Assembly (NCBI RefSeq): GCF_902713615.1
Contig: NW_024055444.1
Location: 62,001 to 126,000, forward strand
DNA: 64,000 nt
DNA from: Scyliorhinus canicula
Taxonomy: Eukaryota
Direction: 5' to 3'
The notes under the pieces were generated by a model that was not told the origin of the DNA, did no database searches, and worked only from the letters and a program-made list of their open reading frames with translations. Position numbers and translations under genes: made by a program. Every line of letters starts with the position of its first letter. Position 1 is the stretch's first letter. Positions 12,615 through 62,438 of the stretch are shown piece after piece.

Positions 12615-13094
12615 TGCTCCTGTATCTGCACTGAGCTTTACAGAAATAGGTGGCGCTGTCTTCAACTCTCACATCCCGAATTTCCAGCGAAAATGTCTTT
12701 TCTGCTTTATTCACCGTCACAACAAATCTCCCTCCGCTGGAGATCCGCTCCCAATCTGCCCCGGGCTGGGTTTGTCTGAAGAAATCCCCGCTTTTCAATT
12801 CAACAGTATAGTATCCACTGTGTAAAACACAGGTGATAGTGAGAGACTGGCACTCCTCCTTGGTCACCGCTCCTGGGCTCTGTGTCACTGACTGACTGAA
12901 ATATCCTGGAAATTAAACAGAGACAGTTTAATGGACCATCACAGCCAGAAACACACATCAGGCTAAAACCCCAGACAGTCTGTAATTGGGATGGAATCGG
13001 GCAGCTTTGTGTTAAATCCACACAATGTGGGTTAGTCTGATCGGTACTCACCGGGTAAACAGACACACAGCGTGAAAACAAGGAGGATCCCCAT
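12615..13094 (-). CDS. IgNAR-like V of NAR-TCR cassette 1, intact; leader exon 13052-13094, V exon 12615-12905
   Basis: Leader MGILLVFTLCVCLP, GTGAGT donor, TTTCCAG acceptor. GYFSQSVTQSPGAVTKEECQSLTITC…FFRQTQPGADWERISSGGRFVVTVNKAEKTFSLEIRDVRVEDSATYFCKAQ shows the VNAR-type short CDR2 region and ISxGGR…TVN motif. Confidence 0.9.
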
Positions 13095-14689: not shown

Positions 14690-15050
14690 ATGAAATAAAA
14701 TGAAAATCGCTTATTGTCACAAGATGAAAGATGAAAATCGCGTATTGTCACGAGTAGGCTTCAATGAAGTTACTGTGAAAAGCCCCTAGTCGCCACATTC
14801 CGGCGCCTGTTCGGGGAGGCTGGTACGGGAATCGAACCGTGCTTCTGGCCTGCTTGAAAAGCCAGCGAGTTAGCCCAGTGAGCTAAACCAGTCCCGCAAG
14901 TAGGCTTCAATTAAGTTACTGTGAAAAGCCCCTAGTCGCCACATTCCGGCGCCTGTTCGGGGAGACTGGTACGGGAATTGAACCGGGCTGCTGGCCTGCC
15001 TTCGTCTGCTTTCAAAGCCAGTGATTTAGCCCTGTGCTAAACCAGCCCCT
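14690..15050 (-). mobile_element. Two tandem copies of the second SINE family
   Basis: AAGTTACTGTGAAAAGCCCCTAGTCGCCACATTCCGGCGCCTGTTCGGGGAG occurs twice; duplicated (ATGAAA) tails. Confidence 0.75.
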
Positions 15051-15417: not shown

Positions 15418-15595
15418 GGGGCTGGTTTACCACAGTGGGGCTAAACAGCTGACTTATAATACAGAACAAGGCCGGCAGCGCGGGTTCAATTACCGTACCA
15501 GCCTCCCCGAACAGGCGCCCGAATGTGGCAACTAGGGGCTTTCACAGTAACTTCATTGAAGCCTACTTGTGACAATAAGCGGTTATTATTATTAT
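15418..15595 (+). mobile_element. Second SINE family copy
   Basis: GGGGCTGGTTTACCAC…GGGTTCAAT…GAAGCCTACTTGTGACAATAAGCGG with (TTA)n tail. Confidence 0.75.
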
Positions 15596-21418: not shown

Positions 21419-21911
21419 ATGGAAATCCTCCTTCTTTTCATCCTGTGTGGCGTATTACCCCGTCAGTACGATAAGACTATCCCATGTTCTGTGGATTTAA
21501 TATAAAGCTGCCCGAGTCCATCCCAATTACAGACACTGTTTCGGGATTCAGCCCCATTGTGGTTGGGCTCTGATGGTCCATTAAACTGTCTCTGTTTAAT
21601 TTCCAGTATGTTTGAATCAGTCAGTGACACAGAGCCCGGCAGCGGTTAACAGGGAGGACTGTCAGTCTCTCACCATAAACTGTATTTTCAGTGCTGGTTA
21701 TAGGGCTTTTTTCAAATATGAGAATTTCTTTCGACAATTTCTGACCGGGACAAGTTGGACGCCGATATAGAGTGGAGGGAGATTTGTTGTCAGGACTCAA
21801 GAAGCAAGGCAGTCATTTTCGCTGGAAATTCTGGATATGAGAGTTGAAGATAGCGCCACCTACTACTGTGAACCTCATCAGGGGTGCTACACACATGTTG
21901 GATGGAACAGT
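21419..21911 (+). pseudogene. IgNAR-like V of cassette 2 with a premature stop, abutting a D-like segment; leader 21419-21461, V exon from 21607
   Basis: Leader MEILLLFILCGVLP, GTCAGT donor. QSVTQSPAAVNREDCQSLTINC…NFFRQ…PI*(TAG 21768-21770)SGGRFVV…EDSATYYCEPHQGCYTHVGWNS. Clear paralogue of 12615-13094. Confidence 0.88.
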
Positions 21912-24272: not shown

Positions 24273-25184
24273 AGAGAATCAGTTCATGGCAGAAAGATTT
24301 GAAATTGTCAGAGTTCTGGAAGTGGCAGCTGCCAGTGAGTAACGGTAAAAACAACTGCGGAAACTGAACAGACTGAACACAACCGACAACTGAGAAACTT
24401 TGGGACAAGTTTGCATGATCACGGAAAAAGGCAACAAGTACAAAGTAAATGTCGAAATAAAATTAAACTAACTGGAAATATTTCAGATTGAAGTGAAACA
24501 TAGAAAAATGATACTAATGGAAGAAAACAGACAGACCGACAAATAGATGGAAAAGCAGATCAAAACTTCTGAGAGATGTTGAACTGCAATAAATTTGTGG
24601 TCATCAAAGTTTAAATCAGGTTTGGCCCAATTGGTGCTGATGAATCGCATTAATTTCCTGCTGGATTTTGCTGTACGAATTGATGCAATACTTCCTATCA
24701 GACAACCGTTTTTGGAAACAGATTGCCTGTGAAAATAACATTTTCCCTCGGTTTGTCTCTATCCAAGGAAACTAAAAACTGAAATGTAATATGCATCATA
24801 GAATCGAGTGCGGCAGGATTACATTCGGCCCTTTGCGTAGATGCTTATCCTCTTTCAATCCAATCAAATTGTTCCAACCAATCCAAATTTTCAACGTTGC
24901 GCTGCATTTTTTACAGGTCCAGCACAGGTCGATTTTCAATTTTGAAAGTTACGACTAAATGTGATCCCAACACGCTGTCTGACATTGCATTCCAGATCGG
25001 AAGAAATTGTGTGTAAAATAAAATATGACTTATTAACCATTTGAACATATTTTATATTTCAAAAAAGTATAAACTGTTCGAACCGGCTGCAAATTCAGAC
25101 AAAGACACCAGTGGGGATGCACTTCACAAACACCCGGGAACCAGCGGATATATGAACAAATAATGTTCAATTTTTATCCGCCAG

Positions 25185-25484
25185 ATTCCAGTTCCTTGGT
25201 GTCCAAGAATCCGCCTTTCCAAACCTCTGCTGCCGGTGACACAGTTACATGAAACTGGGAATATTCAGGGTTCTGTCAGTACACAGTACACTGGGATCAT
25301 CAGTCCCCAGGACAGGCTCTGGAATACCTGCTTCAGAGTCACACTTCAGGAGACGAACATACCGCTGCCGGAGAAAGAATCTCTGCTTCCATCTACACTG
25401 CCAAGAAAATCAGCCGGTTAAAGATCTCTGAACTGCAACTGAGCGACTCCGCTGTGTATTACGCTGCACTGAGCCGGAACACAG
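25185..25484 (+). pseudogene. Supporting TCR-delta V of cassette 2, with a stop
   Basis: Acceptor TTTTTATCCGCCAG; DSSSLVSKNPP…VT*(TGA 25250-25252)NWEYSGFCQYTVHW…SDSAVYYAALSR; paralogue of 7754-8058. Confidence 0.88.
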
Positions 25485-30744: not shown

Positions 30745-30937
30745 GGGGCTGGTTTAGCTCACTGAGCTAAATCGCTGGCTTTTAAAGCAGACCAAGCAGG
30801 CCAGCAGCACGGTTCGATTCCCGTACCAGCCTCCCCGGACAAGCGCCGGAATGTGGCGACTAGGGGCTTTTCACAGTAACTTCATTGAAGCCTACTTGTG
30901 ACAATAAGTGATTTTCATTTCATTTTCATTTCATTTC
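30745..30937 (+). mobile_element. Second tRNA-derived SINE family, full copy
   Basis: GGGGCTGGTTTAGCTCACTGAGCTAAATCG…GGTTCGATTCCCG… with (CATTT)n tail. Confidence 0.8.
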
Positions 30938-32221: not shown

Positions 32222-35200
32222 ATGCACGGCCAGATAACTGGTGTACTTTATGCCATTTACTACCCAATTCTTGCTGCCATTGGAGTTCCGGGTAAGTTGC
32301 TGCACTAACTCATTGACTTGAAGAATCACTGTTTTATGAAGTTACTTCAACCCATTGCAACTAACAACATGATATAATCATCCCCGCGAGTTTTTAAACC
32401 TTATTTGAGCAAGGGAAGCTTAGATCATCCTCATTTAAATATGTCTTAATTTTAAAAAGCTCGGGCCATAATCATTAGTTTCTGACACATCAGTTGATCT
32501 GGGGCTATTCCTTGCCATATCGAGGCTCGGCTGCCAATGTCAGTTGCCTGGATAAAATTAATAATATTTTGGTCACCTTTTCGAAATCAATAGTACCTGA
32601 TCTACAGGTAGATAACTTAAGAATGCAACCTTTAGGTAGATTTTGAATTCGTATGTAAGTCTAAATCGATCAGTAGCGAATTATTACCATGTAATACAAT
32701 TGACTTGAATTACGATAGAATTGCTTTGAGGTGAATTACACTTCGGGGGGATCCGGAATGAGCTGCAGATTCACCGTCAGCTATTTCATTTTTTCGCTTA
32801 ACATGAAGATTCAGCTGCTTAAAATGATGTGGGATTGAAATTGCTATTGCGTTGTAATCCTAACTGGCGTCCAGTTTTGCACTTGATCTGCTTTTCTGTC
32901 GCGTTGATATTACAGGAGAAGAAAACCGGGCCGAGCGTAAAACAAACGAATTTAATCGCTGAAACATTCGTCCAGCGACTGCATTACTCGACCAGTGACA
33001 CAGCCACTTCATTCATCTTCCCTGTACGGTTGCGAGTATTCTGACTGTGCTCTTCAATAACTATTTTACAGAGCCATTGTTGAGGTTGGGCAAAAGATCT
33101 TACAGACGAATCGCAGATATTTGGTGGGAATCATGTAATGTTCAGTGAAGGGGAGATTGCGGTTATGTTCCTGGATTCATGATCAAGAGACACGAGTTCA
33201 AAACGCAGAATTTAATTTAAATTCAGATAACAAATAAATATGGAATTAACTGATATTATCATTAATGATGATTATGAAACTACCAGTGACAGCAGAAAGT
33301 TCACCAGGTTCCACAACGTCCTTTATTGAAGAATATCAACACTAGCGGATATATAATTCCAGATTCACAGCGATATAATTGAACATTAACAGTTCTCTGA
33401 AATGACTCATGAAACCACTCAGTCGGTAAGTCGTGGCTCACAATAACCTTTCAATGGTTAGAATCGACGGACAATAAATGTAATAAATTGTGGTGCTTCT
33501 AAGACGCCAAATCAATTGAATGAATAACTTAAAATTATCTGACGTTTTTTAAAAAGTCATTTTTAAAGGATGCGGCCGTCGCTGGCGAGGCCAGCAATTG
33601 TTTCCCGTGCTTAATTGCTCTTCAGAGGTGGTGGTGGTGATCTGCCTTCTTGAGCACTGCAGTCCATGTAGAGTAGACACACCTACTGTGCTGTTAGGGA
33701 GGGTGCTCCACGATTTTTACCCAGCGACAGTGAAGGGACGGGAATATATGTCCAGGTCAGGATGGTGAGTGACATGTCGGAGAACCTCCCGGTGGTAGTA
33801 TCTGCTGTTTTTCTCCTTCTAGGTGGTAGCAGTCGTGGGTTTCGAAGGTGTTGATGAGGGAATGTTACTGAGTTCCTGCAATGAATCTTGTAAATTGTAT
33901 ACACCGATGCTACAGTGCTTCGGTAGTGGAGGGAATTAATGTTTGTGGAAAGGGTGTCAATCAAATAGGCTGATTTGTGCTGGATGGTTTTGAGCTTATT
34001 GAGCATTATTGGAGCTGCACTCATCTAAGCAGGTATTCCATTCCGTTCCTGGCTTGTACATTGTAGATGGTGGACAGGCTTTGGGGGCGGGGCGAAGGGT
34101 GGGGGGGGGGGGGGGGGGGTTGCACAGGGACGTTACGATCAAAGGGTAAGTTAATCGCGGTAGGATTCCGAGCCTTTAACCTGCGTACATCAATATAAGT
34201 GGTTGAGGCAGAGGACAGCATGCACCAGGTCGCGCCTGTTCTGCATTCAATAAACTCCTGACTGTTATTCGGATTAAAATCCATTTTGCCGCACCATATG
34301 TGACTTGGTTCTCTCAGCCAGCAAATGCTGTCCATCTAAGCCTTGAATATTGAATATATATTTAACAATAAAGAGACCCAGAGCCATCTTGGCAGAGAAT
34401 TCTAAAACAACACATCTATTTTTTGTGAATAAATTCGTGCTCCTCTCAGTCCGAAATAACCTTTCCTTTTTTCTGAAGTGATTCGCCATGAATCCAGAAT
34501 CTTCGGGCACGACCTCTCTCCATAGATTCTGTCACGCCCTTTGAGAATGTTGTTTGTTTCAAGCAGATGGCCTCTTCGACATTTCAGACAATATAAACCT
34601 TATTTGTTTCGCCTCCGTCAGAGAACAAAGAACATAATTTCTCATCAGAATGGAAACTGGCTTCCAAGCCAGCGGTTTCTGAGTCGCACATCATTCGATG
34701 TTTCTTCAGTTGTATTAAACTGACACATCCGATTTGTTTAGAATATTCCCTTATATACTTTTTCAAAACAGAATTTGCAGTGCATTTACAGCTTTTTGGC
34801 CCATCGAGTCTGCACCGGCTCTTGGCAAGAGCAGCCTACTTCAGCCTACGCCTTTACCCGATCCCAAAAACACAATAGCCCCACCTAACCTTTTTAGACA
34901 AGATGTGGAGATGGCGGCGTTGGAGTGGGGTGGGCACAGTAAGAAGTCTTACAACACCAGGTTAAAGTCCAACAGGTTTGTTTCAAACACCATCTTTCCG
35001 AAAGCTCGTGTTTGAAACAAACCTGTTGGACTTTAACCTGGTGTTGTAAGGCTTCTTACTGCCCTTTGTAGACAGTAAAGGACAATTTAGGTAACAAGAC
35101 CAATCCACCTAACCTGCGCATCTTTGGACTGTGGGAGGAAACCGGAGCACCCGAAGGAAACTCACGCAGACACGGGTAGAACGTGTAAACTCCACAAAGG

Positions 35201-36727
35201 GAATCACCCGAGGCCGTAATTGAACCTGGGACCCTGGAGCTGTGATGCAGCAGTGCTAAACATTGTGCAACCGTGCCTCCCTTGTGTCACCGTGTCGCCC
35301 TCGTCTCATTATATACTTCAAAAATACAAATGTAACTAATATGTCACCTATGTTGACAGGCTTTTCCCGTTTACCTGATACATGATCCAAAATTCGAATG
35401 CCAAATATTGAACGTGACCTTCAGATCTTTAACCGTTTCGTCCTTCGCTATGAAATGGCCGCCTTCAATCGCATTTACTTTCGTCCTCAATCTGCTTCTT
35501 GAATGCTTTCCTTAAACTTACCTGCTTGTCCAATTATTCGACATCTGGCATAATACCTTCTCATGTGGCGAGGTGTCAAATTTGGATGTATCAATCTTCT
35601 CTGAAGCAACTTGAGACACCTTTTGCTTTAAAGGTGCTGCATAAATTTAGGATGGCCTTGCAGCTATTTTTAAAACAGAATTGACATTAAAAATCCCAGA
35701 ATAACTGTGTTAGGTGTCCTCTATAACGAAGATGAACTGGAAAATGTCACAATTATGCCGTGTGCATGGTTGGAATATGTTTAGTAACTTTATAATTTTA
35801 ATCTTCTTGTATCTCTCAGTTAACTTGGTGGCGATTGTGGTCCTCTCCAGGGGAAGATGTGGTCTCTCCAAATGCATCACTCGGTATCTGGTGTCTATGG
35901 CAGTGACTGATCTCCTAGTCGTTGTCACCGCTGTCATATTCAATCGGATTATTGGCATCTATTTTCCAGTTAGCTTTATGTCATTGACTCCGGCATGCAC
36001 TCTGAGCACCGTGATAATCTATGCGGCCACCGAGAGTTCTGTCTGGTTAACCGTCGCTTTCACCTTTGATCGTTATATCGCCATTTGCTCCCAGAAACTG
36101 AAGACAAACTATTGCACCGAGAAAACAGCAGCTGTGGTGATAGGAACCGTTTGTTTGTTGAGCTGTTTCAAAAGCATTCCCTGGTACTTTATGTATGAAC
36201 CACTCTATATAATGAACAATGTACCGTGGTTTTGTAACATAAAATCAAGCTTCTCCACCTCACTTGCATGGATAGCCTATGACTGGTTTGCACATGTATT
36301 AAATCCAGGTCTGCCCTTCCTCCTGATTTTGCTATTCAATGCTTTGACCGTCAGGCACATTCTGGCGGCCAGTAGATCCCGCCGGAGACTCCGGGATAAC
36401 AGCAGTGGTGAGAATCAGAGTGATCCAGAGATGCTGAAGAGGAGGAAGTCTATTGTCTTACTCTTCGCCATCTCCGGAAGCTTTGTTCTGTTGTGGATGA
36501 CGTATTTTGTCGATTTCCTGTACGTGAAAATTACAAATGAACCTTATTTGGTAGGATCCAATTTCAATGACCCCAGATTTATTCGCCAAGAAAGTGGAAA
36601 CATGCTTCAGCTGCTGAGCAGTTGCACCAACACGTGCATTTATGCAGTGACACAGAGAAAATTCAGAGAAGAGTTGAGGAATGCGGCAAAATATCTTGGA
36701 AATCTCATAGTGAACTTAGTCAAGTAG
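32222..36727 (+). CDS. Class A GPCR, GPR139/142-like; join(32222..32291,35820..36727), 325 aa, intact
   Basis: Exon 1 MHGQITGVLYAIYYPILAAIGVP-G with GTAAG donor; CTCTCAG acceptor. Exon 2 VNLVAIVVLSRGRCGLS…MAVTDLL…FTFDRYIAIC…SSCTNTCIY. Total 978 nt with seven hydrophobic segments. Confidence 0.9.
33570..34075 (-). mobile_element. Degraded LINE (CR1/L2-type) 3' fragment in the GPCR intron
   Basis: ORF 33683-34024 (SAAPIMLNKLKTIQHKSAYLI…LHYRSTVASVYTIYKIHC) resembles a LINE ORF2 C-terminus. Confidence 0.6.
34938..35060. repeat. Long palindrome (53-bp arms) from a Penelope-like repeat end
   Basis: Arms 34938-34990 and 35008-35060 are reverse complements with one mismatch; the same arm occurs unpaired at ~30303-30390. 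Confidence 0.8.
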
Positions 36728-49818: not shown

Positions 49819-50151
49819 CCTCACGGCGCAGAGATAGGTGGCAGCGTCTGTAACATGCGCCTCTCTCACAGTTAGGATACTGAGCTTGTTGTCTCCACCG
49901 ATTGAAGCTGTAATCCTCCCGTGTTGATCGGTTTCTCTTGTGGCCATCACCAGATGCTGGGGTGACTGATTCGGGTACTGTCTGTACCAGAGTACGATGC
50001 TAAATGCAATGCTGATGGAGCAATTCTTGGACACATTACCCGTTTCACTAACAACCATCCATCCAGGGAGCTGCTGCACCTCATCTTCTCCGCTCACCTC
50101 CGTGCAGATCAAAGTGAAACACAGCAAAATGCCTGTGTGAACCCGAAGCAT
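49819..50151 (-). CDS. TRAV-like V segment with leader and V in one exon
   Basis: Single frame MLRVHTGILLCFTLICTEVSGEDEVQQ…SKNC…VLWYRQYPNQSPQ…VTDAATYLCAVR ending at the heptamer. Confidence 0.9.
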
Positions 50152-51404
50152 TATCAGTTCTCACGCAATACCGAGCTCGGCTCAGAACCGGGAGATGAAA
50201 ACTATATTCTGAAAAATTAACGGGGAACCAAACACTAACTTCGGGTTCACCTAGTGACGTGTTTCTGTTGAACTAACTAAATAGGCTTATGGTTTAACCA
50301 CCCATTTCCCACGTTTCACACTGACACCAGCTCGCACTGTGAGCACACTCCTGACCTGCTACCTTAAATACTTTTCATGTATCGCACTGCCCTCTGGCGG
50401 TGTGAACTGGCAAGTGCACGGTGCAATTATTTACTTAAACTGCCGACAAGTTGCAGTTCACGATATAGTAACGAATGAGAACAGGAATTCCCTCCTGCCT
50501 GTTATAGCTATTTTATTGTGGGAGAGGCTAAATCTCACTTTCCTGTCTGCTGTCCAACGATTGCAGTGCCTTTTGCTCACTATCTCTTCCTGCAAAGCTG
50601 ACCAGTCGGTTTGACAAGACGAAGATCCTGATGAAGGTCCTTATATCATTTTCCAATTTGAACCCGTCAAATGCGAACTCGTCTCTCTATCGGACATTTG
50701 TAACATCCCAACAGTAATAGCAACAGTGAAAACACATGATAATAAATAACTTTTTTTAAAATTCAAGTTTCATATCAGTGTTAAAATAATGTTTCTGTTT
50801 CCGCATTCGCTCCCTCCATCACATTTTCTTCACTAAAGATACTCACCCAGTCTCTCACCGCCCTCTGGTGGCAGCTACAATCACTACAACGTGCGCTTAA
50901 AAATACCTGTCCCGTTTCTGGAACCTAAGGCCATAAGACATAGGAGCAGAGTAAGGCCATTTGGCCCATCACGTTTGCTCCGCCGGTCAAACACAGCTGA
51001 TGTACGTCTCATACCCAATCCCCTGCCTTCTCCGTATAACCCTGGTTCCCTTATTAATCAAGAAGCTGACTATCTCTGTCCGGCGTGGGGCAGCTGAGGC
51101 TCAGCAAGGTAAGAAGCCCTCATTTTTGCGGCACCAGCTGCCGGAAGGGAAGTGTTTAAAGGGACAATTAAAAAGACATGTGGGACAGACAAGGCGGGGT
51201 ATCGGACGGGGGTGGGGGGGGGGGGGGTGTGGGCGGATACAATGGTGCGTTGGTCGAACAGCAAGGGAGGGGGTCTGCTCAGACCGGACTTGTGTCGGGT
51301 CAGACCAGAGGGCCTCTGCTGGAACAGAGAAACCGGGGGGTGGGGGGGGGGGGGCGATCGAATGGGAGTCGCAGGAGTCGAGTGGGATCGGAGGGAGGAG
51401 GGTC

Positions 51405-53202
51405 AGGCTAGACTGGAGTTGGGGGGTCAGGCTGGTCTGGAGTGGGAGGGTCAGGCTGGACTGGAGTGGGAGGGTCAGGCTGGATTGGAGTGGGAGGGTC
51501 CGGCTGGACTGGAGCGGGAGGGTCAGGCTGGACTGGAGTGGGAGGGTCAGGCTGGACAGGAGTGGGAGGGTCAGGATGGGCTGGAGTGGGAGGGTCAGGC
51601 TGGACTGGAGCGGGAGGGTCAGGCTGGACTGGTGTGGGAGGGTCAGGCTGGACTGGAGTGGGAGAGTCAGGCTGGACTGGTGTGGGAGGGTCAGGCTGGA
51701 CTGGAGTGGGAGGGTCAGGCTGGACTGGTGTGGGAGGTTCAGGCTGGACTGGAGTGGGAGAGTCAGGCTGGACTGGTGTGGGAGGGTCAGGCCGGACTGG
51801 AGTTGGGGGGTCAGGCTGGTCTGGAGTGGGAGGGTCAGGCTGGACTGGAGTGGGAGGGTCAGGCTGGATTGGAGTGGGAGGGTCCGGCTGGACTGGAGCG
51901 GGAGGGTCAGGCTGGACTGGAGTGGGAGGGTCAGGCTGGACAGGAGTGGGAAGGTCAGGATGGGCTGGAGTGGGAGGGTCAGGCTGGACTGGAGCGGGAG
52001 GGTCAGGCTGGACTGGAGTGGGAGGGTCAGGCTGGACTGGAGTGGGAGAGTCAGGCTGACTGGTGTGGGAGGGTCCAGGCTGGACTGGTGTGGGAGGGTC
52101 AGGCTGGACTGGAGTGGGAGAGTCAGGCTGGACTGGTGTGGGAGGGTCAGGCTGGACTGGAGTGGGGGGGTCAGGCTGGAGTGGTGTGGAGGTTCAGGCT
52201 GGACTGGAGTGGGAGAGTCAGGCTGGACTGGTGTGGGAGGGTCAGGCTGGACTGGAGAGGGAGGGTCAGGCTGGACTGGAGTCGGGAGTCAGGCTGGACT
52301 GGAGGGTCAGGCTGGACTGGTGTGGGAGGGTCTGGCTGGACTGGAGTGGGAGTGTCAGGCTGGACTGGAGTGGGAGGGTCAGGCTGGATGGAGAGGGAGG
52401 GTCAGCCTGGACTGGAGGGTCAGGCTGAACTGGAGTGGGGGGTCAGGCTTGACTGGGGTGGGAGGGTCAGGCTGGACTGGAGTGGGGGTCAGGCTGGACT
52501 GGAGTTGGGGGTCAGGCTGGACTGGAGTGGGAGGGTCAGGCTGGACTGGAGTGGGGTGTCAGGCTGTTCTGAAGTGGGAGTGTCAAGCTGGACTGGAGAG
52601 GGAGGGTCAGGCTGGACTGGAGGGTCAGGCTGGACTGGAGTGGGAGGGTCAGGCTGGACTGGAGTGGCAGGGTCAGGCTGGACTAGAGAGGGAGGATCAG
52701 GCTGGACTGGAGTGGGGGGCCAGGCTGGACTGGAGTGGGAGGGGCAGGCTGGACTGGAGTGGGAGGGGCAGGCTGGACTGGAGTGGGACGGTCAGGCTGG
52801 ACTGGATTGGGAGGGTCAGGCTGGATTGGAGTGGGAGGGTCAGGCTGGAGTGGGAGGGTCAGTCTGGACTGGAGGGTCAGGCTGGACTGGAGTGGGGAGT
52901 TATGGCTGGACTGGAGTGGGAGGGTCAGGCTGGACTGGAGTGGGAGGGTCAGGCTGGACTGGAGTGGGAGGGTCAGGCTGGACTGGAGTGGGAGGGTCAG
53001 GCTGGATTGGAGTGGGGGGTCAGGCTGGACTGGAGTGGGAGGGTCAGGCTGGACTGGAGTGGGAGGGTCAGGCTGTACTGGAGTGGGAGGGTCAGGCTGG
53101 ATTGGAGTGGGGGGCCAGGCTGGACTGGAGTGGGATGGGCAGGCTGGACTGGAGTGGGAGGGTCAGGCTCGACTGGAGTGGGAGGGTCAGGCTGGACTGG
53201 AG
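51405..53202 (+). repeat. 24-bp G-rich minisatellite (GGAGGGTCAGGCTGGACTGGAGTG)n running into an assembly gap
   Basis: Roughly 70-75 variant units; translations give the 8-aa repeat SGRVRLDW; 100 N at 53203-53302. Confidence 0.95.
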
Positions 53203-53302
53203 NNNNNNNNNNNNNNNNNNNNNNNNNNNNNNNNNNNNNNNNNNNNNNNNNNNNNNNNNNNNNNNNNNNNNNNNNNNNNNNNNNNNNNNNNNNNNNNNNN
53301 NN

Positions 53303-56300
53303 GGGCAGATACCTGATGGTACGGGGCAGACTGGAGGGGAGAAGAGTGGTGCTGGTAAATATATATGCCCCGAACTGGGATGACGTGGACTTCATTAAAA
53401 AAGTGCTGGGGAAGATCCCGGGCCTGGATTCTCGCAGGTTAATAATGGGAGGGGACTTTAACATGGTCCTTGACCCGACTTTGGATCGGTCGTGTCCCAG
53501 AACGGGTAGACTCTCAGCAATGGCAAGGGAGCTGAAAGGGTTTATGGAGCAAATGGGGGCAGTGGATTCCCTGGAGAGATAGATAGCCAACAGGAAGGGG
53601 CTACTCGTTTCACTCGCACGTCCATAAAGTATATTCCAGGATAGATTTATTTGTACTAAGCAGGGACTGTATGGGGCAGGTAAAGAACACGGAATACTCA
53701 GCAATTACCATTTCAGACCATGCCCCGCATTGGGTGGACCTGCAGTTCGGGGGAGCGAGTTATCAACGCCCGCAATGGAGGCTAGATGTGGGACTGCTTT
53801 CGGAGGAGGGGATCTGCGAGAGGCTTCGGAAATGTATAAAAAATTACCTGTAGGTGAATGACACAGGGGAAGTCTCAGCGGCGACCTTGTGCGAGGCGCT
53901 AAAGGCAGTAGTGCGGGGGGAGCTGATTTCAATTGGGGCCCACAGAGCCAAGGCAGACCGGGCAGAGATGGATAGATTGGTCAGGGAAATGGGTCGGATA
54001 GATGAAGAGCATGCGGAGTCCCTGGAGGAGGTTTTACTCAGGGAGAGGCAGAGGCTACAGGCGGAACTGGGGGCACTATCCACGAGCAGGGCCGTAGAAC
54101 AGCTTAGGAAGGCGAGGGGAGTGGTGTACGAGCATGGGGAAAAGGCTAGCAGGCTGTTAGCGCAGCAACTCAGGAGGAGGGAGGCGGCCACGGAAATAGG
54201 TAGAGTGAGGGACGAGGGGGGGGGTGGCGCAAAGTGGAGGACCCGGCAGAATTGAATAGGGTATTCCGGGACTTCTATCATAAGCTGTACACTTCGGAGC
54301 CGCTGGAAGAACCGGAGGGGATGAAAAGGTTTCTGGACGGGTTAACATTCCCAACAGTTGGTGGGGGGCGAGTGGAAGAGCTGGGGGCCCCGATTAGAGT
54401 AGAGGAGGTATTGGGGGGCCTTAAGGCTATGCAGTCGGGGAAGTCCCCGGGGCCGGATGGATACCCAGTAGAGTTTTATAGGAGGTTCTCTGAGCTGGTG
54501 GGCCCGGTCTTGGCGAGGGTTTTCAATGAGGCAAGGGACAGAGGGACCCTGCCGCCGACAATGTCACAAGCCACCATATCTCTGATATTGAAGCGGGGTA
54601 AAGACCCGGAGGCGTGCGGGTCCTACAGGCCAAACTCCCTGATTAATGTAGACACCAAGCTCCTGGCAAAGGTACTGGTGGGTAGAATGGAGGACTGTGT
54701 ACCGGAGGTGATTGGGGAGGATCAATCGGGGTTCGTGAAAGGTAGGCAGCTGGCGACCAATCTGAGGAGATTACTCAATGTGATAATGATGCCCCCGGCG
54801 GGTAGAGAGGTGGAGGTAGTGGTGGCAATGGACGCCGAGAAGGCCTTTGACCGGGTGGAGTGGGACTATCTATGGGAGGTGCTCAGACGGTTTGGGTTCG
54901 GGGAGGGATTGGTGGATTAGATCAAATTATTATATCAGGCCCCGAGGGCCAGCGTCAGGACCAACAGAGAAGTGTCGGAGTACTGTAGGTTGTACCGAGG
55001 GACCAGACAGGGCTGCCCGCTCTCCCCACTGCTGTTTGCTCTGGCCATAGAGCCGCTGGAGATTGCGCTGAGAGCCGCAGAGGGTTGGAAGGGGATGGTG
55101 AGGGGCAGGGTTGAACACAGGGTTTCTCTTTATGCAGACGACCTGCTCCTGTACGTGTCAGACCAGTGGCCGGGATGGAAACTATACTGGGAATGCTGAG
55201 GAAGTTCGGCCAGTTCTCAGGATACAAATTAAATACGGTCAAGAGTGAAATGTTTGTGGTCCAGGCAAGGGGCCAGGAGAACAGATTGAGAGGGCTACCG
55301 TTTAGGCTGGTTGAGGAAAATTTCCGGTATTTGGGAATCCAGGTGGCACGAGACTGGGGCAGGCTGCATAAGTTAAATTTGGCCAGGGTGGTGGAGCAAA
55401 TGAAGGGAGAGTTTCGGAGATGGGATGCACTCCCGCTGTCGCTGGCAGGGAGGGTGCAGACTGTAAAGATGACAATCCTCCCTCGATTTTTGTTTATTTT
55501 TCAGTGCCTCCCGATCTTTATCCCACAGTCCTTCTTCAAAAGAGTTAACGGGCTGATCATGAGCTTTGTCTGGGCGGGAAAATCCCCGCGGGTAAAGAAG
55601 GTGATGTTGGAGAGGAACCGCAGCGAGGGAGGGCTGGCTTTGCCGAGTCTGGTCAATTATTACTGGGCGGCCAACATCGCTATGATAAGGAAGTGGATGG
55701 TGGGTACGGGGTTTATTTGGCAGCGGGTGGAGGCGGCTTCGTGCAGGGGCTCCAGCTTGGAAGCCCTGGTTACGGCTCCTCTACCGCTGCCGCCGGCCAA
55801 GTACACCACCAGCCCGGTAGTGGTGGCGACCCTGCGGATATGGGGCCAGTGGAGGAGGCATGTGGGAGAGATGGGGGCGTCTGTCTGGGCGCAAATCTGC
55901 GACAACCATCGGTTTGCCCCCGGCAGTATGGATGGGGGGTTCCGAGTATGGCGGCGAGCAGGGGCGGGAAGGGTGGGTGATATGTTCCTGGAAGGGAGCT
56001 TCACGAGTTTGAGGAGCATGGAGGAGAAATTTGGGTTGGTAAGGGGAAATGATTTTCGATACCTACAGTTGCGGGACTTTGTTCGTAGACAGGTCCCATC
56101 TTTCCCACGCCTCCCGCCAATGGGGATCCTCGACAGAATAGTCTCTAGGAGGGAAGAAGGGGAGGGCAGAGTCGCGGGTATATATAAGGTGCTCATGAGG
56201 GAGGAAGGGTCCCAGACAGAGGAACTGAAACTTAAATGGGAGGAGGAGCTAGGCGGGGAAATGGAGGATGGGCTGTGGGCAGAGGCCCTGAGTAGGGTAA

Positions 56301-57056
56301 ACTCGACCGCGACATGTGCTAGGCTCGGGCTGATCCAATTTAAGGTCATTCACCAGGCCCATATGACGGTGGCTCGGATGAGCAAATTTTTCGGGATAGA
56401 GGACAAATGCGCTAGGTGCGCGGGAGGACCAGCGAACCACGTTCACATGTTTTGGGCATGCCCTAAGCTGAGGGAGTACTGGGAGGGATTTGCGGGGTCA
56501 TGTCCCAGGTGCTAAAAACAAGGGTGGTGATGAGTCCAGGGGTGACAATTTTTGGGGTTTCGGAAGACCCGGGCGTCCAGGGGGAGAAAGAGGCCGATGT
56601 GTTGGCCTTTGCTTCCCTGATAGCCCGGCGATGAATATTATTGGCGTGGAGGGACTCAAAGCCCCCGAAGACTGAGTGGTGGCTTGCGGACATGTCGAGT
56701 TTCCTGGGGATGGAGAAAATTAAGTTCGCCTTGAGGGGATCTGTGCAGGGGTTCACCCGGAGGTGGCAACCATTTATTGACTTCTTTGCGGGAGAGTGAG
56801 TGTCAGCACGTGGGTGGGGGGGGGGGGGGGGGGGAGGGGGGGGGGGAGGGGGGGGGGGTAGAGTTGAGAAGGAGGGAAAATATGGCGGGTAGTACCAGTG
56901 GGAGGGGAGCGGGCTTGTGCAATATGTTACGATGGAAGTATTGAAAGTACGTGGATGTTTGCACATTTGTGCCTTTTTTGCTTTCTTTCTGATGATGTCT
57001 GTAACTGTTTATAAAGCCAAAAACTACCTCAATAAAATTGTTTATTAAAAAAAAAC
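53303..57056 (+). mobile_element. L1-clade LINE ORF2 and 3' end, disrupted
   Basis: NIYAPNWDD, MGGDFNMVLD, MDAEKAFDRV, YADDLL, C-terminal CARC…NHVHMFWAC knuckle; G-rich 3' UTR, AATAAA and A-tail at ~57031-57056. Confidence 0.93.
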
Positions 57057-57059
57057 AAG

Positions 57060-57660
57060 ACAAGCAGACTCACACAAGGACATAAAACACAGTTGGAACC
57101 ATCATCATATGCAGCAGCACATAGTGAGAAGACAGTAACACAGACATGAGGGTATACACTGCCGCCCACATTAGCACACATATATGGGCACACGGAGAAG
57201 CACGTTAACAGCTTACACACGGATAAAGAAAGACATACATGAAATACAGCAGAGCATTCGGATGCACACAGTTAAATGCAAACATTAGCGTGCTCATACA
57301 CGAGAGGACACGAAAACACACATTAGTACACAGGGGACGTATATATTTCAAAACATAGTCATATAAATCTATCAATGCATACATACACGTATTAACACAT
57401 CAACACAGACGTATATACGCGCGCATAAACATTCGTATATTGATAGATATGTGGTGCAGAAGGAAACATATCACTACATATATACCAGGCCAGAACACAT
57501 AAGCGCGCATTAACACAACTCTGAATAAATAAACATAGACTTCAATACAAAATATCTCATTCATACAGAAACATAGACAGAAGCACGAAATGCACAAACA
57601 ATCACACAGGTTAAAACTCATGGCACATGAACAATGAAATGAACGCTCATAAACACATTT
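57060..57660. repeat. Degenerate (CA)/(TA)-rich low-complexity tract
   Basis: Dense ACAC/ATAC content with no stable period. Confidence 0.55.
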
Positions 57661-58061
57661 GGACAGACAAACCGTTCAAGGCAAATCACGAGTTAGTTCA
57701 GCATTAAAGACAAACGACAAGATGAGAGTATATTTCTAATATAACATTTAATGGGCATATTCACCAAAATCTATCCCCATTTAATAATGTTCCCACTAAC
57801 GCATAAGTGTTCCATTACCATAAACAACTAAGACAGGAACTGACGTCCGAATTCTTAGCAGAAATATTACAGTTTTCAAATAAGAAGCTCAGTGAACTTC
57901 CCTCAATATCAATCGTCATAATCTCACATTGTAACAAATTGTTCAAAAATAAACTGAAACTAAATAAAAGCTGCCATGTTTTCGACCCGGACTGTTTGAG
58001 GAACGTAAAGGAAGAAGAGCTGTGTAGACAGTGACAGAGATCGGTTTCTGAGTGGCACGAA

Positions 58062-59236
58062 CTCAGCAGAGTGGGGATAAAGGGATCTTTTTCATGATGG
58101 CAGGCGGTGACTAGTGGTGTGCCTCAGGGGCCCGTGCTTGGACCACAACTTTTCACAATATACATTAATGATTTGGAAGGAGGAATTGAAGGCACTGTTG
58201 CTAAGTTTGCAGATGATACAAAGATCTGTAGAGGGGCAGATAGTATTGAGGAAGCGGGGGGGGGGGGGGGTGGTGCAGAAGAACTTGGACAGGCTAGGAG
58301 TGGGCAAAGAAGTGGCAGATGGAATACAATGTGGGAAAGTGTGAGATTATGCTCTTCGGAAGCAGAAATTGAGGCATAGACTATTTTCTAAATGGGAAGA
58401 TGCTTAAGAAATCAGAAGCACAAAGGGACTTGGGACTCCTTGTTCACGATTCTCTTCAGGTTAACGTGTAGGTTCAGTCGGCAGTAGGAAGGCAAATGCA
58501 ATGTTAGCATTCATGTCGGAAGGGCTAGAATACAAACCACGGATGGACTTCTGAAGCTATATTCCCGTACCAGCCTCCCCAAACAGGCGCCGGAATGTGG
58601 CGACGAGGGGCTTTTCACATTAACTTCATTTTGAAGCCTACTTGTGACAATAAGCGATTTTCATTTCTTAAGGCTCTGGTCAGATCCCATTTGGAGTATT
58701 GTGAGCAGTTTTGGGCACCGTATCTAAGAAAGGATGTGGTGGCCTTGAAAAGGGTCCAGAGGAGGTTCACAAAAATGATCCCTGGAATGAAGAACTTGTA
58801 TGAGGAACGGTTCAGGACTCTGGGTCTGTACCCGTTGGAGTTTAGAAGGATGAGGGGTGATCTTATTGAAACTTACGGGATACTGCGAGGCCTGGATAGT
58901 GTCGACGTGGAGAGGATATTTCCACTTGGAGAAAAACTAGAAGCAGAGAACACTCTCAGACTAAAGAAACGATTCTTTAAACCAGAGATCAGGAGGAATT
59001 TCTTCAGGCAGAGGGTGCTGAATCTGTGGAACTATTTGCCGCAGAAGGCTGTGGAGGCAAAATCACTGAGTGTCTTTAAGACAGAGATGGACAGGTTTTT
59101 GATCAACAGGTGGATCAGGGGTTATGTGGAGAAGGCAGGAGAATGGGGATGCGAACAATATCGGTCATGATTGAATGGCGGAGCAGACTCGATGGGACGA
59201 GTGGCCTAATTCTGCTCCTATGTCTTATGGTCTTAT
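58062..59236 (+). mobile_element. CR1 3' fragment with a SINE insertion (~58556-58665)
   Basis: TSGVPQGPVLGPQLFTIYINDL…KFADDTK; LEYCEQFWAPYLRKDV…; (TCTTATG) tail. Confidence 0.9.
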
Positions 59237-59372
59237 AGAAGATGTACAATGATTATTAAATTCGAGAATATATTACTCACTTAAGAAAGATAAAAGGTAA
59301 TATGTATAATAACACAAGATATCCTGGAGGGAAACACAATTTAACTACATTTCCTCGGCTCCATCCTCGTAG

Positions 59373-59651
59373 AAAACACAGACCACACCTGGACGGAAGA
59401 CTATGAGGATGATAACGGCAACATCTGGACAACCGCTTCCACATTCATCACCCTGTTCTTCCTGAGCATGTAGTACAGCACAGCCGTTACTCTGGTGAAG
59501 GTGAGAAGATTCAATCCACTCACACTTCAAACTGACAGCAGCAGCAGTTTGAAAACTCATTGAACTTTTCATTGATTAAAAAATCTAACACTAATGCCCG
59601 AGATCACAAACATCTGCTTCGTTATTTAATCTTCTTTTACAGATTAAGTGA
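59373..59651 (+). pseudogene. Orphan immunoglobulin heavy-chain transmembrane exons: TM1 59373-59500 (in-frame TAG) and TM2 59643-59651
   Basis: CTCGTAG acceptor; NTDHTWTEDYEDDNGNIWTTASTFITLFFLSM*YSTAVTLVK; phase-0 GTGAGA donor; 142-nt intron; CTTCTTTTACAG then ATT AAG TGA (IK*). Matches the IgH CART motif and the M1/M2 exon split. Confidence 0.88.
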
Positions 59652-59864
59652 CCGGTTGATTCTGCGTAATTATGCATCATTAATTGATGCGTAATTCTGA
59701 ATGCTGGAATACAAGATTTGTGTTCAAACAGTTTAATGTTTCTGTATCTATTATAAAGTTTATTTTGTTCAGGACAGTGAATTATTGTGGCTTTATCATC
59801 TTACTGTGCAAGTGTGATTTCATACTTTATCTACTTTGAAACATATTAATAGTCCTTAACTTGA

Positions 59865-62438
59865 TCATGAAGCATCGGTTAATCTAAAGCAACTGCTGAA
59901 AATGACGAAGGGAAAAATGAGCAACTTCTTCAGCTCATTTCGGAACTTGGTCTGGGCTTCTGCATAGATGAAGGTGTTGTTGCAGGAACTGAGTAACTGA
60001 AGCATGTTGGACGTTTCTTGAAATATGAAGTGTGGGACATTGAAATTCAGACCGGTGAAGTAGGCCTCACCTGTAACACGAACATATAGGAAATGTCCAA
60101 CATATGTGACCCAGAGGAGGAGGAAGCTGAGCGAGATGGAGAAGAGCAGGACAATCGACTTCTTGCGGTTGGCTATCTCTGGATCTCCGTCACTCTCTGA
60201 GCCCTTCAGTCTCCTGCGGGCTCTGCTGGCCTCTACAATGTGCCTTACAGTCAGGGCGTTGAGCATCAGAATAAAGAAGAACGGAAGAAAAGGGGTTAAT
60301 ATGTGGTCGAGCCAGTCTAAAGCTTGCCACGATGGAATCGTGTAATAGCTGGACCTAATTTCACAGAACCAGGGAATCTCGTCCAATATGTACAAGGGCT
60401 GGTAGGTGAAGTACAAAGGGATGTTCTTGGCGTAGCTCAAGGTAATGACCATTCCTATGACCAGCAGTGCCGTTTTCTCGGTGCAGTATCGGCTCTTCAG
60501 TCTCTGACAGCAGATGGATACAAAACGGTCGAAGGTGAAGGCCACGGTCAGCCATACTGAACCATCACGGGTCGCATAAACAAGCACGGTGCTGACAGCG
60601 CATCCGGGGGTGATCGATAGGATGCTGTATCTAAAGTAAATGCCACCAATCCGGTTGAGGATAACAGCGGTGACCATGACAAGGAAATCAGTCACTGCTA
60701 TCGCTACCAGGTAGTAGGTGATACACCGAGAGAGTCCGCACCGTCCTCGGGATAGGATGATGATCGCCATCAAGTTGGCTGTAATAGAGAAAAGAGAGAG
60801 CCGTCACTGAGCGGACTCCAAAAACCAGCGACTCCCTGATCCATTCTGCTGCTGAATCCCTCCTGACCTGTCCATTTCGCACCTCCACATTTCAATTATT
60901 CCAAAACCATTACTACTTGATGCAAATCCAATGCTGGATTAAACGTTTGTCAATTCATCAAATATCACAATCAGTCCCTGCAACAAACTCCGCTCTCTGG
61001 CCACTGGGTCCATTCCCGTGGCTGGCCATCCTCTAAAGTTAGAGACCATTTACAATATTCAAGTTTTGTTTGACGGTGGGATGAACTTCCAAACGCCCAC
61101 ATTCCCAAACCCGTCGGTCATAAGCACCGACACTGCATAATTCGACATTTCTCCACAGCCTATGGTATCGCCGGTCTGAAAGTCTGCCTTAGCTTAAGAG
61201 CTACTCAAACCCTTATTTACCACTTTCATATGTCTACCCTTCCAATTTGCATCGCCAGTGAACTCAACTGAAAGGGGCGGTACGGTAGCATAGTGGTTAG
61301 CACAGTTGCTTCACAGCTCCAGGGTCTGAGGTTCCATTCCCGGCTTGGGTCACTGTCTGTGCAGCGTCTTCACATCTCCCCGTGTCTGCCCGGGTCTCCT
61401 CCGGGTGCTCCGGTTTCCTCCTACATTCCAAAGATGTGCAGGTTAAGTGGATTGGCCATGCGAAATTGCCCTTACGTGTCCAGGAAGGTTGGGTGGTGTT
61501 ACTGGGTTATGGGGATACGGTGGAGGTGTGGGCTTGGGTGGGGTGCTCTTTCCAAGGGCCGGTGCAGACTCGATGGGCCGAGTGGCCTCCTTGTGCACTG
61601 TAAATGCTATGATTCAATGATCCAAAACTGTTGTTCCTAATGAATAACTCATACCACATCCCGTTCAGCCATTGTAAATGTACTGCCTTCGATCACAGCG
61701 CCAGGGCCCTGGGTTCAATTCTGACCTTGGGTTACTGTCTGTGGAGTTTTTACTTTCTCACTGTGTCTGTGTGGTTTCCTCTGGGTGCCTCTCACAGCCC
61801 AACGATGTGCAGTTTAGCTGGATTGGCTATTCTAAATTGCCCCTCAGTGTCTAAAGCAGATGTGTAGGTTAGGTGAGGCTAAGGGGTTATTGGGAAAGCG
61901 GAGGGGACTGAGCCTGTGCGCAGTACTCTTTTCAAAGTTTGGTACATGTTCGAATCGCCTCCATTTGAACTGATTCTCTGATTGCCTAACAAAGCCTCTA
62001 TTTCAGAATTCTCTTGATTGTTTCACTTACCTCATGCGGCTTATTAGACTAGTCCGTCCCCATTCCTGTGCCATCCTGCAGCCCAATGACGATTTGTAGC
62101 AAATGTGTTGCACTGTTTAACAATATAACGTCCGCACAATGCTAAACATTATAACTCATATTTCTGCAGTCTAATAAACAATTGTTCTATAAGTGTGAAG
62201 GGTAATTTATTGACCATTTATTGTCCTGCTCTGTAATACAAAATTAAGTGATGCACTCTAATATATCGTAATGCGGTAAACTTTTCAGCACGATCCTTAA
62301 AGGGAAGAGATAAGAATTCTGGAGATTCAGAAGAAAAATAAATATTTCAGTTGAGATTCCGCTCTTACCTGGGACACCAATAATAGTGAGTGCCGGGTAA
62401 TAAATGGCAGAAAATGGTCCATTCGCTGGTCCATGCAT
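59865..62438 (-). CDS. Class A GPCR, GPR139/142-like; complement(join(59865..60778,62369..62438)), 327 aa, intact
   Basis: Exon 1 MHGPANGPFSAIYYPALTIIGVP-G with GTAAG donor; exon 2 ANLMAIIILSRGRCGLS…FTFDRFVSIC…SSCNNTFIY. Same 70-nt first exon and intron phase as 32222-36727. Confidence 0.9.
61275..61615 (+). mobile_element. HE1-like SINE in the GPCR intron
   Basis: GGGGCGGTACGGTAGCATAGTGGTTAG… family body. Confidence 0.8.

What the first reader, a model, noticed from the sequence alone, without database searches (positions are those of the whole stretch)
59373..59651. Orphan IgH membrane exons (TM1 and TM2) stranded in the TCR V region
Seen: a TM1 exon with acidic spacer and IWTTASTFITLFFLS…YSTAVTLVK, correct splice sites, and a TM2 exon (IK*) 142 nt later. 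One TAG disrupts TM1. I found no CH exon in the window; upstream are CR1, low-complexity DNA and L1, and the GPCR stop lies 214 bp downstream on the other strand. The supplied ORF track misses it. Established: this is the IgH CART motif and exon split; shark IgH genes are clusters, and Ig-type V segments occur at the shark TCR-delta locus. Inference: the 3' relic of a whole IgH cluster (isotype undetermined) once inserted here, possible physical evidence for the route by which NAR/IgH V-D-J units entered TRD. Intact splice sites suggest recent inactivation.
Basis: partly seen in the sequence, partly recalled or inferred. Interest (0 to 1): 0.8.

Follow-up and report, generated by a model that had tools for sequence, protein, structure and literature searches.

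The report
Orphan shark IgM membrane-exon relic
This is a real leftover of the membrane-anchor exons of a catshark IgM antibody gene. It has no constant-region exons upstream and sits among T-cell-receptor V genes, which is an ordinary gene fragment in a region where antibody and TCR genes are already known to be interleaved.

Summary
Window 59373-59500 (+) is an IgH TM1 exon with an acidic spacer, the motif WTTASTFITLFFLS and one in-frame TAG. Window 59643-59651 is a TM2 exon reading 'IK*'. Splice sites and phase match real shark IgM genes. The isotype is IgM: the best hits among 1.84 billion proteins are bamboo-shark IgM membrane chains (87% identity), and 38 of 44 residues match a cloudy-catshark IgM.

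BLAST and a profile of 12 shark IgM C regions find no Cmu exon anywhere in the 64 kb. Upstream lie a CR1, low-complexity DNA, a decayed L1, a 100-N gap and a G-rich minisatellite.

The genome is Scyliorhinus canicula, and the window lies on a 138-kb contig. NAR-type, VH-like and TCR-alpha-type V exons lie to the left. A two-V-set gene model lies to the right, beyond an intact GPR139-like gene.

No public contig carries the TAG. The one contig that matches the locus-specific letters reads TAC, at low depth. Locus-specific contigs in a run that holds spliced IgM cDNA are unspliced.

Best reading: a dead 3' fragment of an IgM minicluster. IgH clusters interleaved with TCR alpha/delta-type V exons were published in 2025. 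The NAR/IgH-into-TRD inference is not supported. Earlier scan notes list similar orphan Cmu4-TM fragments elsewhere in this genome.

The parts
59236..59372 (+). Residual intron upstream of TM1 (137 bp), ending in a polypyrimidine tract and the AG acceptor. The last ~37 bp align with the bamboo-shark Cmu4-TM1 intron.
   Evidence: (blastn 59336-59513 vs L001 11811-11988, 80% identity)
59373..59500 (+). IgM TM1 exon: phase-1 start (AA + codons), acidic spacer, CART-type TM helix; ends on a complete AAG codon before the GTGAGA donor.
59471..59473 (+). In-frame TAG inside TM1, at the position that is F or S in functional shark IgM. Not seen in any Logan contig laid. One low-depth contig that matches the locus reads TAC.
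59501..59642 (+). TM1-TM2 intron, 142 nt (about 131 nt in bamboo-shark IgM).
59643..59651 (+). TM2 exon coding part: ATT AAG TGA = Ile-Lys-stop, as in spliced catshark IgM mRNA (ATC AAG TGA).
   Evidence: (loose end at 59500 in X8)
58048..59235 (+). 5'-truncated CR1-like LINE (RT C-terminal part and 3' tail), carrying a ~105-bp SINE-like insert at 58561-58667. It separates TM1 from whatever lay upstream.
53303..57048 (+). Decayed L1-like LINE (ORF2 in several frames, poly-A end at ~57040). Its 5' part runs into the gap.
53203..53302 (.). 100-N assembly gap of unknown true size. It is the only place where Cmu exons could still be hidden.
59865..62438 (-). Neighbouring intact two-exon GPR139-like receptor gene (exon 1 62438-62370, exon 2 60776-59865), tail-to-tail with the relic. 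It is 100% identical to an annotated S. canicula protein.

Best explanation
The stretch is a non-functional 3' fragment of a catshark (Scyliorhinus canicula) IgM heavy-chain minicluster. Only the two membrane exons (TM1, TM2), their short intron and 137 bp of the upstream intron survive. The Cmu1-4 exons that would supply the splice donor are absent from the assembled sequence, so the exons cannot make a membrane IgM. In the assembly TM1 also carries a stop codon. Shown: exon identity, IgM isotype, intact splice signals, absence of C exons in the 64 kb, LINE insertions upstream, V exons on both sides, and no spliced RNA from this copy. Inferred: the fragment arose from an IgM cluster lying among TCR alpha/delta-type V exons. 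That cluster either lost its 5' part here, by deletion and rearrangement with later CR1 and L1 insertions, or was copied as a partial cluster by segmental duplication. The fragment now drifts as a pseudogene.
For: Exon anatomy matches real IgM: the acceptor, phase, donor and the two-codon TM2 are all the same as in bamboo-shark IgM. Best matches are IgM membrane chains: P0001 at 87% over 30 aa, E 6.7e-9, and S. torazame P0011 at 38/44 residues. P0001's Cmu4 is 96% identical to nurse-shark mu chains. The only IgM hit in the window is TM1, by tblastn at E up to 50 on both strands and by an HMM of 12 shark IgM chains against all six-frame pieces. No C1-set signature was found. A CR1 ends 137 bp before TM1, and further upstream lie low-complexity DNA, an L1 and the gap. 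No VH or JH of IgM type lies upstream. In run X8, which holds spliced TM1-TM2 junctions from paralogues, the near-identical locus contigs 59240-59431 and 59489-59857 run unspliced across both splice sites. The published map places IgM, IgW and IgNAR clusters next to TCR alpha/delta, with TCR-type V exons between IgH clusters (PMC12227049).
Against: The 100-N gap at 53203-53302 has unknown true size and could hide Cmu exons; catshark IgM C genes span 19-24 kb. No contig in four runs shows the TAG, and one locus-matching contig of depth 4.9 reads TAC = Tyr. The exon pair may therefore be intact in some individuals. All splice signals are intact and there are no indels. pN/pS against bamboo-shark TM1 is 0.32, so most of its history was under constraint. 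The strand of the unspliced RNA is unknown.
Confidence: 0.8

Rival explanations
1. The orphan state is an assembly artefact. The Cmu exons lie in the unsequenced gap at 53203-53302, so this is the end of a more complete IgM gene or pseudogene.
For: A 100-N run is a placeholder of unknown size. The L1's 5' end runs into it. A G-rich minisatellite abuts it on the same strand, and earlier scan notes place G-rich arrays just upstream of Cmu1 in catshark IgM clusters. S. torazame IgM C genes span 19-24 kb.
Against: No VH, D or JH of IgM type lies upstream of the minisatellite; the nearest V is a TCR-alpha-type exon on the opposite strand. The minisatellite is AGCT-poor, at 2.2 per kb against 3.8 per kb in the window as a whole. 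The arrays in the earlier notes are described as AGCT-rich. NCBI's annotation calls no gene between the GPCR and 10 kb beyond it.
Confidence: 0.12
2. The exon pair is still in use. It is intact in at least some haplotypes (TAC, not TAG) and serves as terminal membrane exons for a transcript starting at another exon of the V region. Ig/TCR leader exons end in phase 1, which would be in frame with TM1.
For: All three splice signals are intact and there are no indels. A locus-matching contig in X1 reads TAC. Low-level RNA-type coverage of the locus appears in X8. An earlier first-reader note proposes a similar leader-to-Cmu4 splice elsewhere in this genome; it is unchecked.
Against: The locus-specific contigs in X8 are unspliced at both the TM1 acceptor and the TM1-TM2 intron, while paralogous IgM in the same run is spliced. 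No joint into 59373 was reported. The assembly has a stop codon. No upstream partner exon was identified.
Confidence: 0.04
3. Chance resemblance, or a TM exon of some non-Ig gene.
For: The piece is short (43 codons plus 2).
Against: tblastn gives E 6e-16 and the HMM E 1e-12 within the window. The three best of 1.84 billion proteins are IgM chains, aligned at their C-terminal TM. Exon boundaries coincide base for base with bamboo-shark IgM.
Confidence: 0.01

Closest known systems
Membrane exons (mu-m TM1/TM2) of elasmobranch IgM heavy-chain miniclusters, e.g. Chiloscyllium punctatum GCC19654.1 (P0001), Scyliorhinus torazame P0010/P0011/P0015, and the Heterodontus francisci 'Ig heavy chain C region, membrane-bound form' (P0013)
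   Same: Acidic spacer followed by WTTASTFITLFFLS..YS.AVTLVK. TM1 ends on a full codon. TM2 has two codons plus a stop. The TM1-TM2 intron is short (~130-140 nt). The acceptor is phase 1 and fits the internal Cmu4 donor. Identity is 77-87% in amino acids and 80% in DNA to bamboo shark.
   Different: There are no Cmu1-4, V, D or J upstream. The assembly has one in-frame TAG. A CR1 lies 137 bp upstream. This copy is not spliced in the RNA contigs seen.
[quoted passage not shown] 2025, PMC12227049)
   Same: An IgM-derived element lies amid NAR-type, VH-like and TCR-alpha-type V exons in catshark.
   Different: The section read from that paper describes gene clusters and V exons, and the words 'pseudogene' and 'orphan' do not occur in its main text. 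This window is on a 138-kb contig, not a chromosome-scale one.
Human/mouse membrane IgM TM segment in the B-cell receptor structures (8e4c, 7xq8, 7xt6)
   Same: The conserved TM core: window IWTTASTFITLFFLSM vs human NLWTTASTFIVLFLLSL, then YSTAVTLVK vs YSTTVTLFK. The split into M1 and M2 exons is the same, with M2 coding two residues.
   Different: This is similarity of a homologous exon only. Here it is not attached to any constant domain.
Orphan Cmu4-tailpiece-TM1-TM2 fragments noted elsewhere in this genome by the scan (s1-278436, s1-278478), unchecked
   Same: IgM 3' ends without Cmu1-3 or VDJ, next to TCR alpha/delta V arrays.
   Different: Those notes report that Cmu4 is retained; here even Cmu4 is missing. 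I could not fetch those loci to test whether they share flanks with this one.

Membership tests
IgH membrane exons (TM1/TM2) | Conserved antigen-receptor TM core (…TTASTF…L..L…YS…VTL.K) preceded by an acidic extracellular spacer | tested here: met
   window reads EDYEDDNGNIWTTASTFITLFFLSM*YSTAVTLVK. It aligns in register with human, mouse and shark mu-m.
IgH membrane exons (TM1/TM2) | Exon split: TM1 ends after …VK on a full codon; TM2 has two codons plus a stop; consensus splice sites | tested here: met
   AAG|gtgaga, then ttttacag|ATTAAGTGA. Bamboo-shark L001 has the same boundaries (GAAG|gtgaga … ccag|GTTAAGTGA).
IgH membrane exons (TM1/TM2) | Phase-1 acceptor that completes a codon begun by the internal donor of the last CH exon | tested here: met
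   the exon starts with AA (G+AA = Glu), where bamboo shark has AT (G+AT = Asp, the D of …KSS|DSIDRTW in P0001).
Functional IgM heavy-chain gene | Cmu1-Cmu4 (C1-set) exons upstream on the same strand | tested here: not met
   there is no C-domain match anywhere in the 64 kb on either strand. Only the 100-N gap is untested.
Functional IgM heavy-chain gene | Open reading frame through TM1 | tested here: inconclusive
   The assembly has TAG at 59471-59473. No laid contig from 4 runs has G at 59473, and one locus-matching contig (depth 4.9) reads TAC.
Functional IgM heavy-chain gene | Spliced TM1-TM2 in RNA | tested here: not met
   X8 holds spliced junctions from paralogues, but the near-identical locus contigs (59240-59431, 59489-59857) are unspliced. 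Contigs cannot prove absence.
IgM isotype (versus IgW, IgNAR) | Closest relatives are mu chains | tested here: met
   the three Ig hits are all IgM-type chains whose Cmu4 is 82-96% identical to named nurse-shark and Triakis IgM. IgW and IgNAR TM sequences were not obtained, so the comparison is indirect.
Location inside the TCR alpha/delta V region | TCR-type V exons on both sides on one contiguous sequence; linkage to TRAC/TRDC | tested here: inconclusive
   To the left of the gap lie NAR-type V, TCR-alpha-type V and VH-like supporting V. A two-V-set gene model lies ~8 kb to the right, beyond the GPCR. The contig is only 138 kb, so linkage to the C genes is not shown.

The most novel reading that the evidence does not exclude
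The exon pair is intact in natural haplotypes (TAC = Tyr rather than TAG). It is kept because transcripts from the surrounding TCR/NAR V array, for example phase-1 leader exons, can splice onto it. That would give small membrane-anchored products carrying the CD79-binding IgM TM. Alternatively, it marks a recurrent duplication unit (V array + IgM 3' end + GPR139-like gene) that shuffles Ig and TCR parts in the catshark antigen-receptor complex.
Probability: 0.04. Interest if true: 0.7.

Novelty: new member of a known kind. Interest (0 to 1): 0.25.

Why it matters
It adds one more small, concrete sign that IgM miniclusters and TCR alpha/delta-type V arrays have been physically interleaved and reshuffled in sharks. 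That arrangement was already published in 2025. On its own the relic says nothing about how NAR or VH segments reached TCR delta. Its practical value is for annotation: it is an IgM pseudogene fragment to be masked in repertoire and gene-model work. It could also serve as a marker for tracing segmental duplications in the catshark antigen-receptor complex, together with the other orphan Cmu4-TM fragments the scan has noted.

Tried and rejected
1. Bamboo-shark P0002 (half of Cmu4 plus TM, 95 aa) first looked like a second 'orphan'. Locus L001 showed that the missing part is simply N gaps (4984-9997), so it is not evidence for orphans.

2. I tried to test synteny through the GPR139-like neighbour. 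Its closest relatives were found: S. canicula paralogue P0040 (91%), S. torazame P0039 (90%) and Mustelus P0041 (83%). The tool held no DNA for those assemblies and listed no neighbouring gene within 10 kb. The S. torazame IgM loci also came without DNA.

3. I tested whether the G-rich 24-bp minisatellite at 51397-53202 is the 'switch-like' J-Cmu array noted in other catshark IgM clusters. It is AGCT-poor, has no VH or JH upstream and has no other copy in the window. A sequence look-up in the scan's notes was blank. It was left unexplained.

4. I considered CR1 3' transduction as the way the TM exons were carried here. I rejected it as unsupported: the CR1 ends with its own normal 3' tail at 59235, as other copies do, and the TM1-TM2 intron is retained.

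5. Checking the TAG in reads: the single read-laying run, at 85% likeness, was dominated by tens of paralogous TM1 copies. Locus-specific contigs break at 59425-59431 and resume at 59489-59509, so the TAG is neither confirmed nor refuted. My decomposition of X1's summed depths into four contigs is an inference.

6. The Pfam scan of the TM piece gave only a sub-threshold chance hit (Imm27).

7. The paper's supplementary table of catshark coordinates is not held.

Full report
**What is there.** On the + strand a polypyrimidine tract and AG end at 59372. From 59373 the sequence reads, in phase 1, (E)NTDHTWTEDYEDDNGNIWTTASTFITLFFLSM*YSTAVTLVK, up to a consensus donor AAG|gtgaga at 59500/59501. After 142 nt a strong acceptor (ttttacag) precedes ATT AAG TGA (59643-59651). 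The in-frame stop is TAG at 59471-59473. The stop codon of the receptor gene on the other strand begins at 59865, 214 bp further on.

**It is not chance, and it is IgM.**
- The first 32 residues were searched against PDB chains. The top hits are the TM helix of human and mouse membrane IgM (NLWTTASTFIVLFLLSL).
- Against 1.84 billion representative proteins the best hits are three bamboo-shark Ig chains, aligned at their C-terminal ends (P0001 E 6.7e-9, 87% identity).
- P0001 has four constant domains, and its Cmu4 is 96% identical to named nurse-shark mu chains.
- The window's 44 readable residues match the cloudy-catshark IgM membrane form P0011 at 38 positions. The window also shares 'LSM' and the terminal 'KI' with P0010 and P0015.
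- tblastn of P0001 against the window gives E 6e-16 at this spot.
- In bamboo-shark genomic DNA (L001) the TM1 acceptor, the phase (G+AT = Asp there, G+AA = Glu here), the donor and the two-codon TM2 fall at the same places, with a ~131-nt intron.
- DNA identity across TM1 and its immediate intron flanks is 80%.
- IgW and IgNAR TM sequences were not retrieved. The isotype call rests on IgM being the only Ig class to reach significance and on the high identity.

**Orphan status.**
- tblastn with word size 2 and E up to 50 on both strands found no Cmu1-4 match; the next best hit has E above 1.
- A profile HMM built from 12 shark IgM C regions was searched with all filters off against every stop-free six-frame piece of at least 15 aa. 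It hit only TM1, at E 1e-12; the next hit has E 0.2.
- A C1-set signature scan found nothing beyond a V exon.
- Upstream of TM1, in order, lie: 137 bp of intron; a 5'-truncated CR1 (58048-59235) that ends in its own 3' tail and carries a ~105-bp repeat insert; unique and ACA-rich DNA (57050-58047); a frame-shifted L1 (53303-57048); a 100-N gap (53203-53302); and a 24-bp G-rich minisatellite (51397-53202).
- No IgM-type VH or JH is present. The V-like matches are only 25-33% identical to a bamboo-shark VH.
- The gap is the one untested place. Catshark IgM C genes span 19-24 kb, so hidden C exons cannot be excluded. I give this about 12%.

**Surroundings.**
- The receptor ORF next door is 100% identical to the annotated 'probable G-protein coupled receptor 139' of Scyliorhinus canicula, on a contig of 138,148 bp. 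Its first exon is at 62438-62370, so the gene is intact.
- A 62%-identical paralogue lies at 32222-36727.
- To the left of the gap are a NAR-type V (12631-12897, best PDB hits VNAR, E 6e-20), a VH-like supporting V (7745-8020) and a TCR-alpha-type V (49813-50088, TRAV12-like). There are also further V exons at about 4948-5235, 21849, 25148-25471 and 48071-48484.
- To the right, beyond the window, the assembly's annotation has a two-V-set gene model about 8 kb past the receptor gene.
- The relic therefore has V exons on both sides, independently of the gap. Linkage of this small contig to the TRA/TRD constant genes is not shown.

**Reads (one call allowed).**
- At 85% likeness the TM1 core collects summed depths 40-60 times those of the flanks in two DNA runs. 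This fits tens of IgM TM1 copies in the genome.
- Run X8 carries contigs in which TM1 is followed directly by ATCAAGTGATCGG…, that is, spliced TM1-TM2 of paralogous IgM. X8 therefore holds cDNA.
- In the same run the near-identical locus contigs (59240-59431 with 3 differences; 59489-59857 with 1 difference) cross the TM1 acceptor and the whole TM1-TM2 intron unspliced.
- X16's two contigs are 90% paralogues.
- No contig in any run has G at 59473. Solving X1's depths and contig counts at six diagnostic positions gives four contigs. One of them (depth 4.9) keeps the window's letters at 59470, 59472, 59480, 59482 and 59488 but reads C at 59473, which makes the codon TAC (Tyr). This is weak evidence: the depth is low and the decomposition is my own. 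It does mean the TAG is unverified and may be an allele or a consensus error.

**How old.** TM1 differs from an expressed paralogue at 14 of 146 positions. Against bamboo shark, pN/pS is 0.32 over 41 codons. Constraint has therefore dominated the shared history, and the data cannot date the loss. Frame-shifted L1 ORFs and a CR1 carrying a nested insertion argue against a very recent event. 'Recent inactivation' is not supported either way.

**Interpretation.** This is a dead 3' fragment of an IgM minicluster. Flajnik et al. [quoted passage not shown] They also showed that TCR-type V exons lie between IgH clusters. An IgM fragment among such V exons is an expected by-product of birth-and-death evolution in that complex. 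It carries no V, D or J and is of IgM type, so it does not bear on how NAR V or VH segments came to serve TCR delta. Whether the fragment decayed in place or was copied as an already partial cluster is open. Unchecked scan notes of orphan Cmu4-TM fragments beside TCR V arrays elsewhere in this genome make the second option plausible.

**Verdict.** The finding is a new member of a known kind and of low to moderate interest.

Noticed in passing
window 51397-53202 (runs into the gap at 53203): A minisatellite of ~77 copies of the 24-bp unit GGAGGGTCAGGCTGGACTGGAGTG, with GC 66% and GC skew +0.6, on the same strand as the TM exons. It is AGCT-poor (2.2 per kb) and has no other copy in the window. 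It is unlike the AGCT-rich 'switch-like' arrays noted upstream of Cmu1 in other catshark IgM clusters. Its origin is unexplained.
   Followed up: partly
window 62438-62370 + 60776-59865 (-) and 32222-32290 + 35822-36727 (+): Two two-exon GPR139-like receptor genes, 62% identical to each other, are interspersed with the V exons. The first is identical to an annotated S. canicula protein. The family is very large in elasmobranchs: 1717 database proteins at E below 1e-20, many per species.
   Followed up: partly
window 12631-12897 (-) with 7745-8053 (-); ~21600-21870 (+) with 25148-25471 (+): Two NAR-type V exons, each followed a few kb downstream on its own strand by a VH-like 'supporting' V. 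This is the NAR-TCR doublet arrangement. The second supporting V has an in-frame stop.
   Followed up: partly
window 58561-58667 and at least 7 other places (3143-3246, 14731-14832, 14897-14978, 15489-15590, 30817-30921, 38663-38765, 47322-47426): A ~105-bp interspersed repeat, 87-93% identical between copies. Here it is nested inside the CR1 upstream of TM1.
   Followed up: no
L001 (Chiloscyllium punctatum BEZZ01002637.1) 4984-9997 and P0004: Two bamboo-shark gene models look like unusual IgM forms: half of Cmu4 plus TM (95 aa), and VH-Cmu1-TM (276 aa). The first is a product of N gaps in the draft assembly. The second was not examined and may be the same.
   Followed up: partly
window 59352-59519, runs X1 and X3: Summed contig depth over the TM1 core is 40-60 times that of the flanks in two DNA runs. 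This suggests tens of IgM TM1 copies in the S. canicula genome. The common paralogue reads ATT TCC (Ile-Ser) where this copy has ATG TAG.
   Followed up: partly
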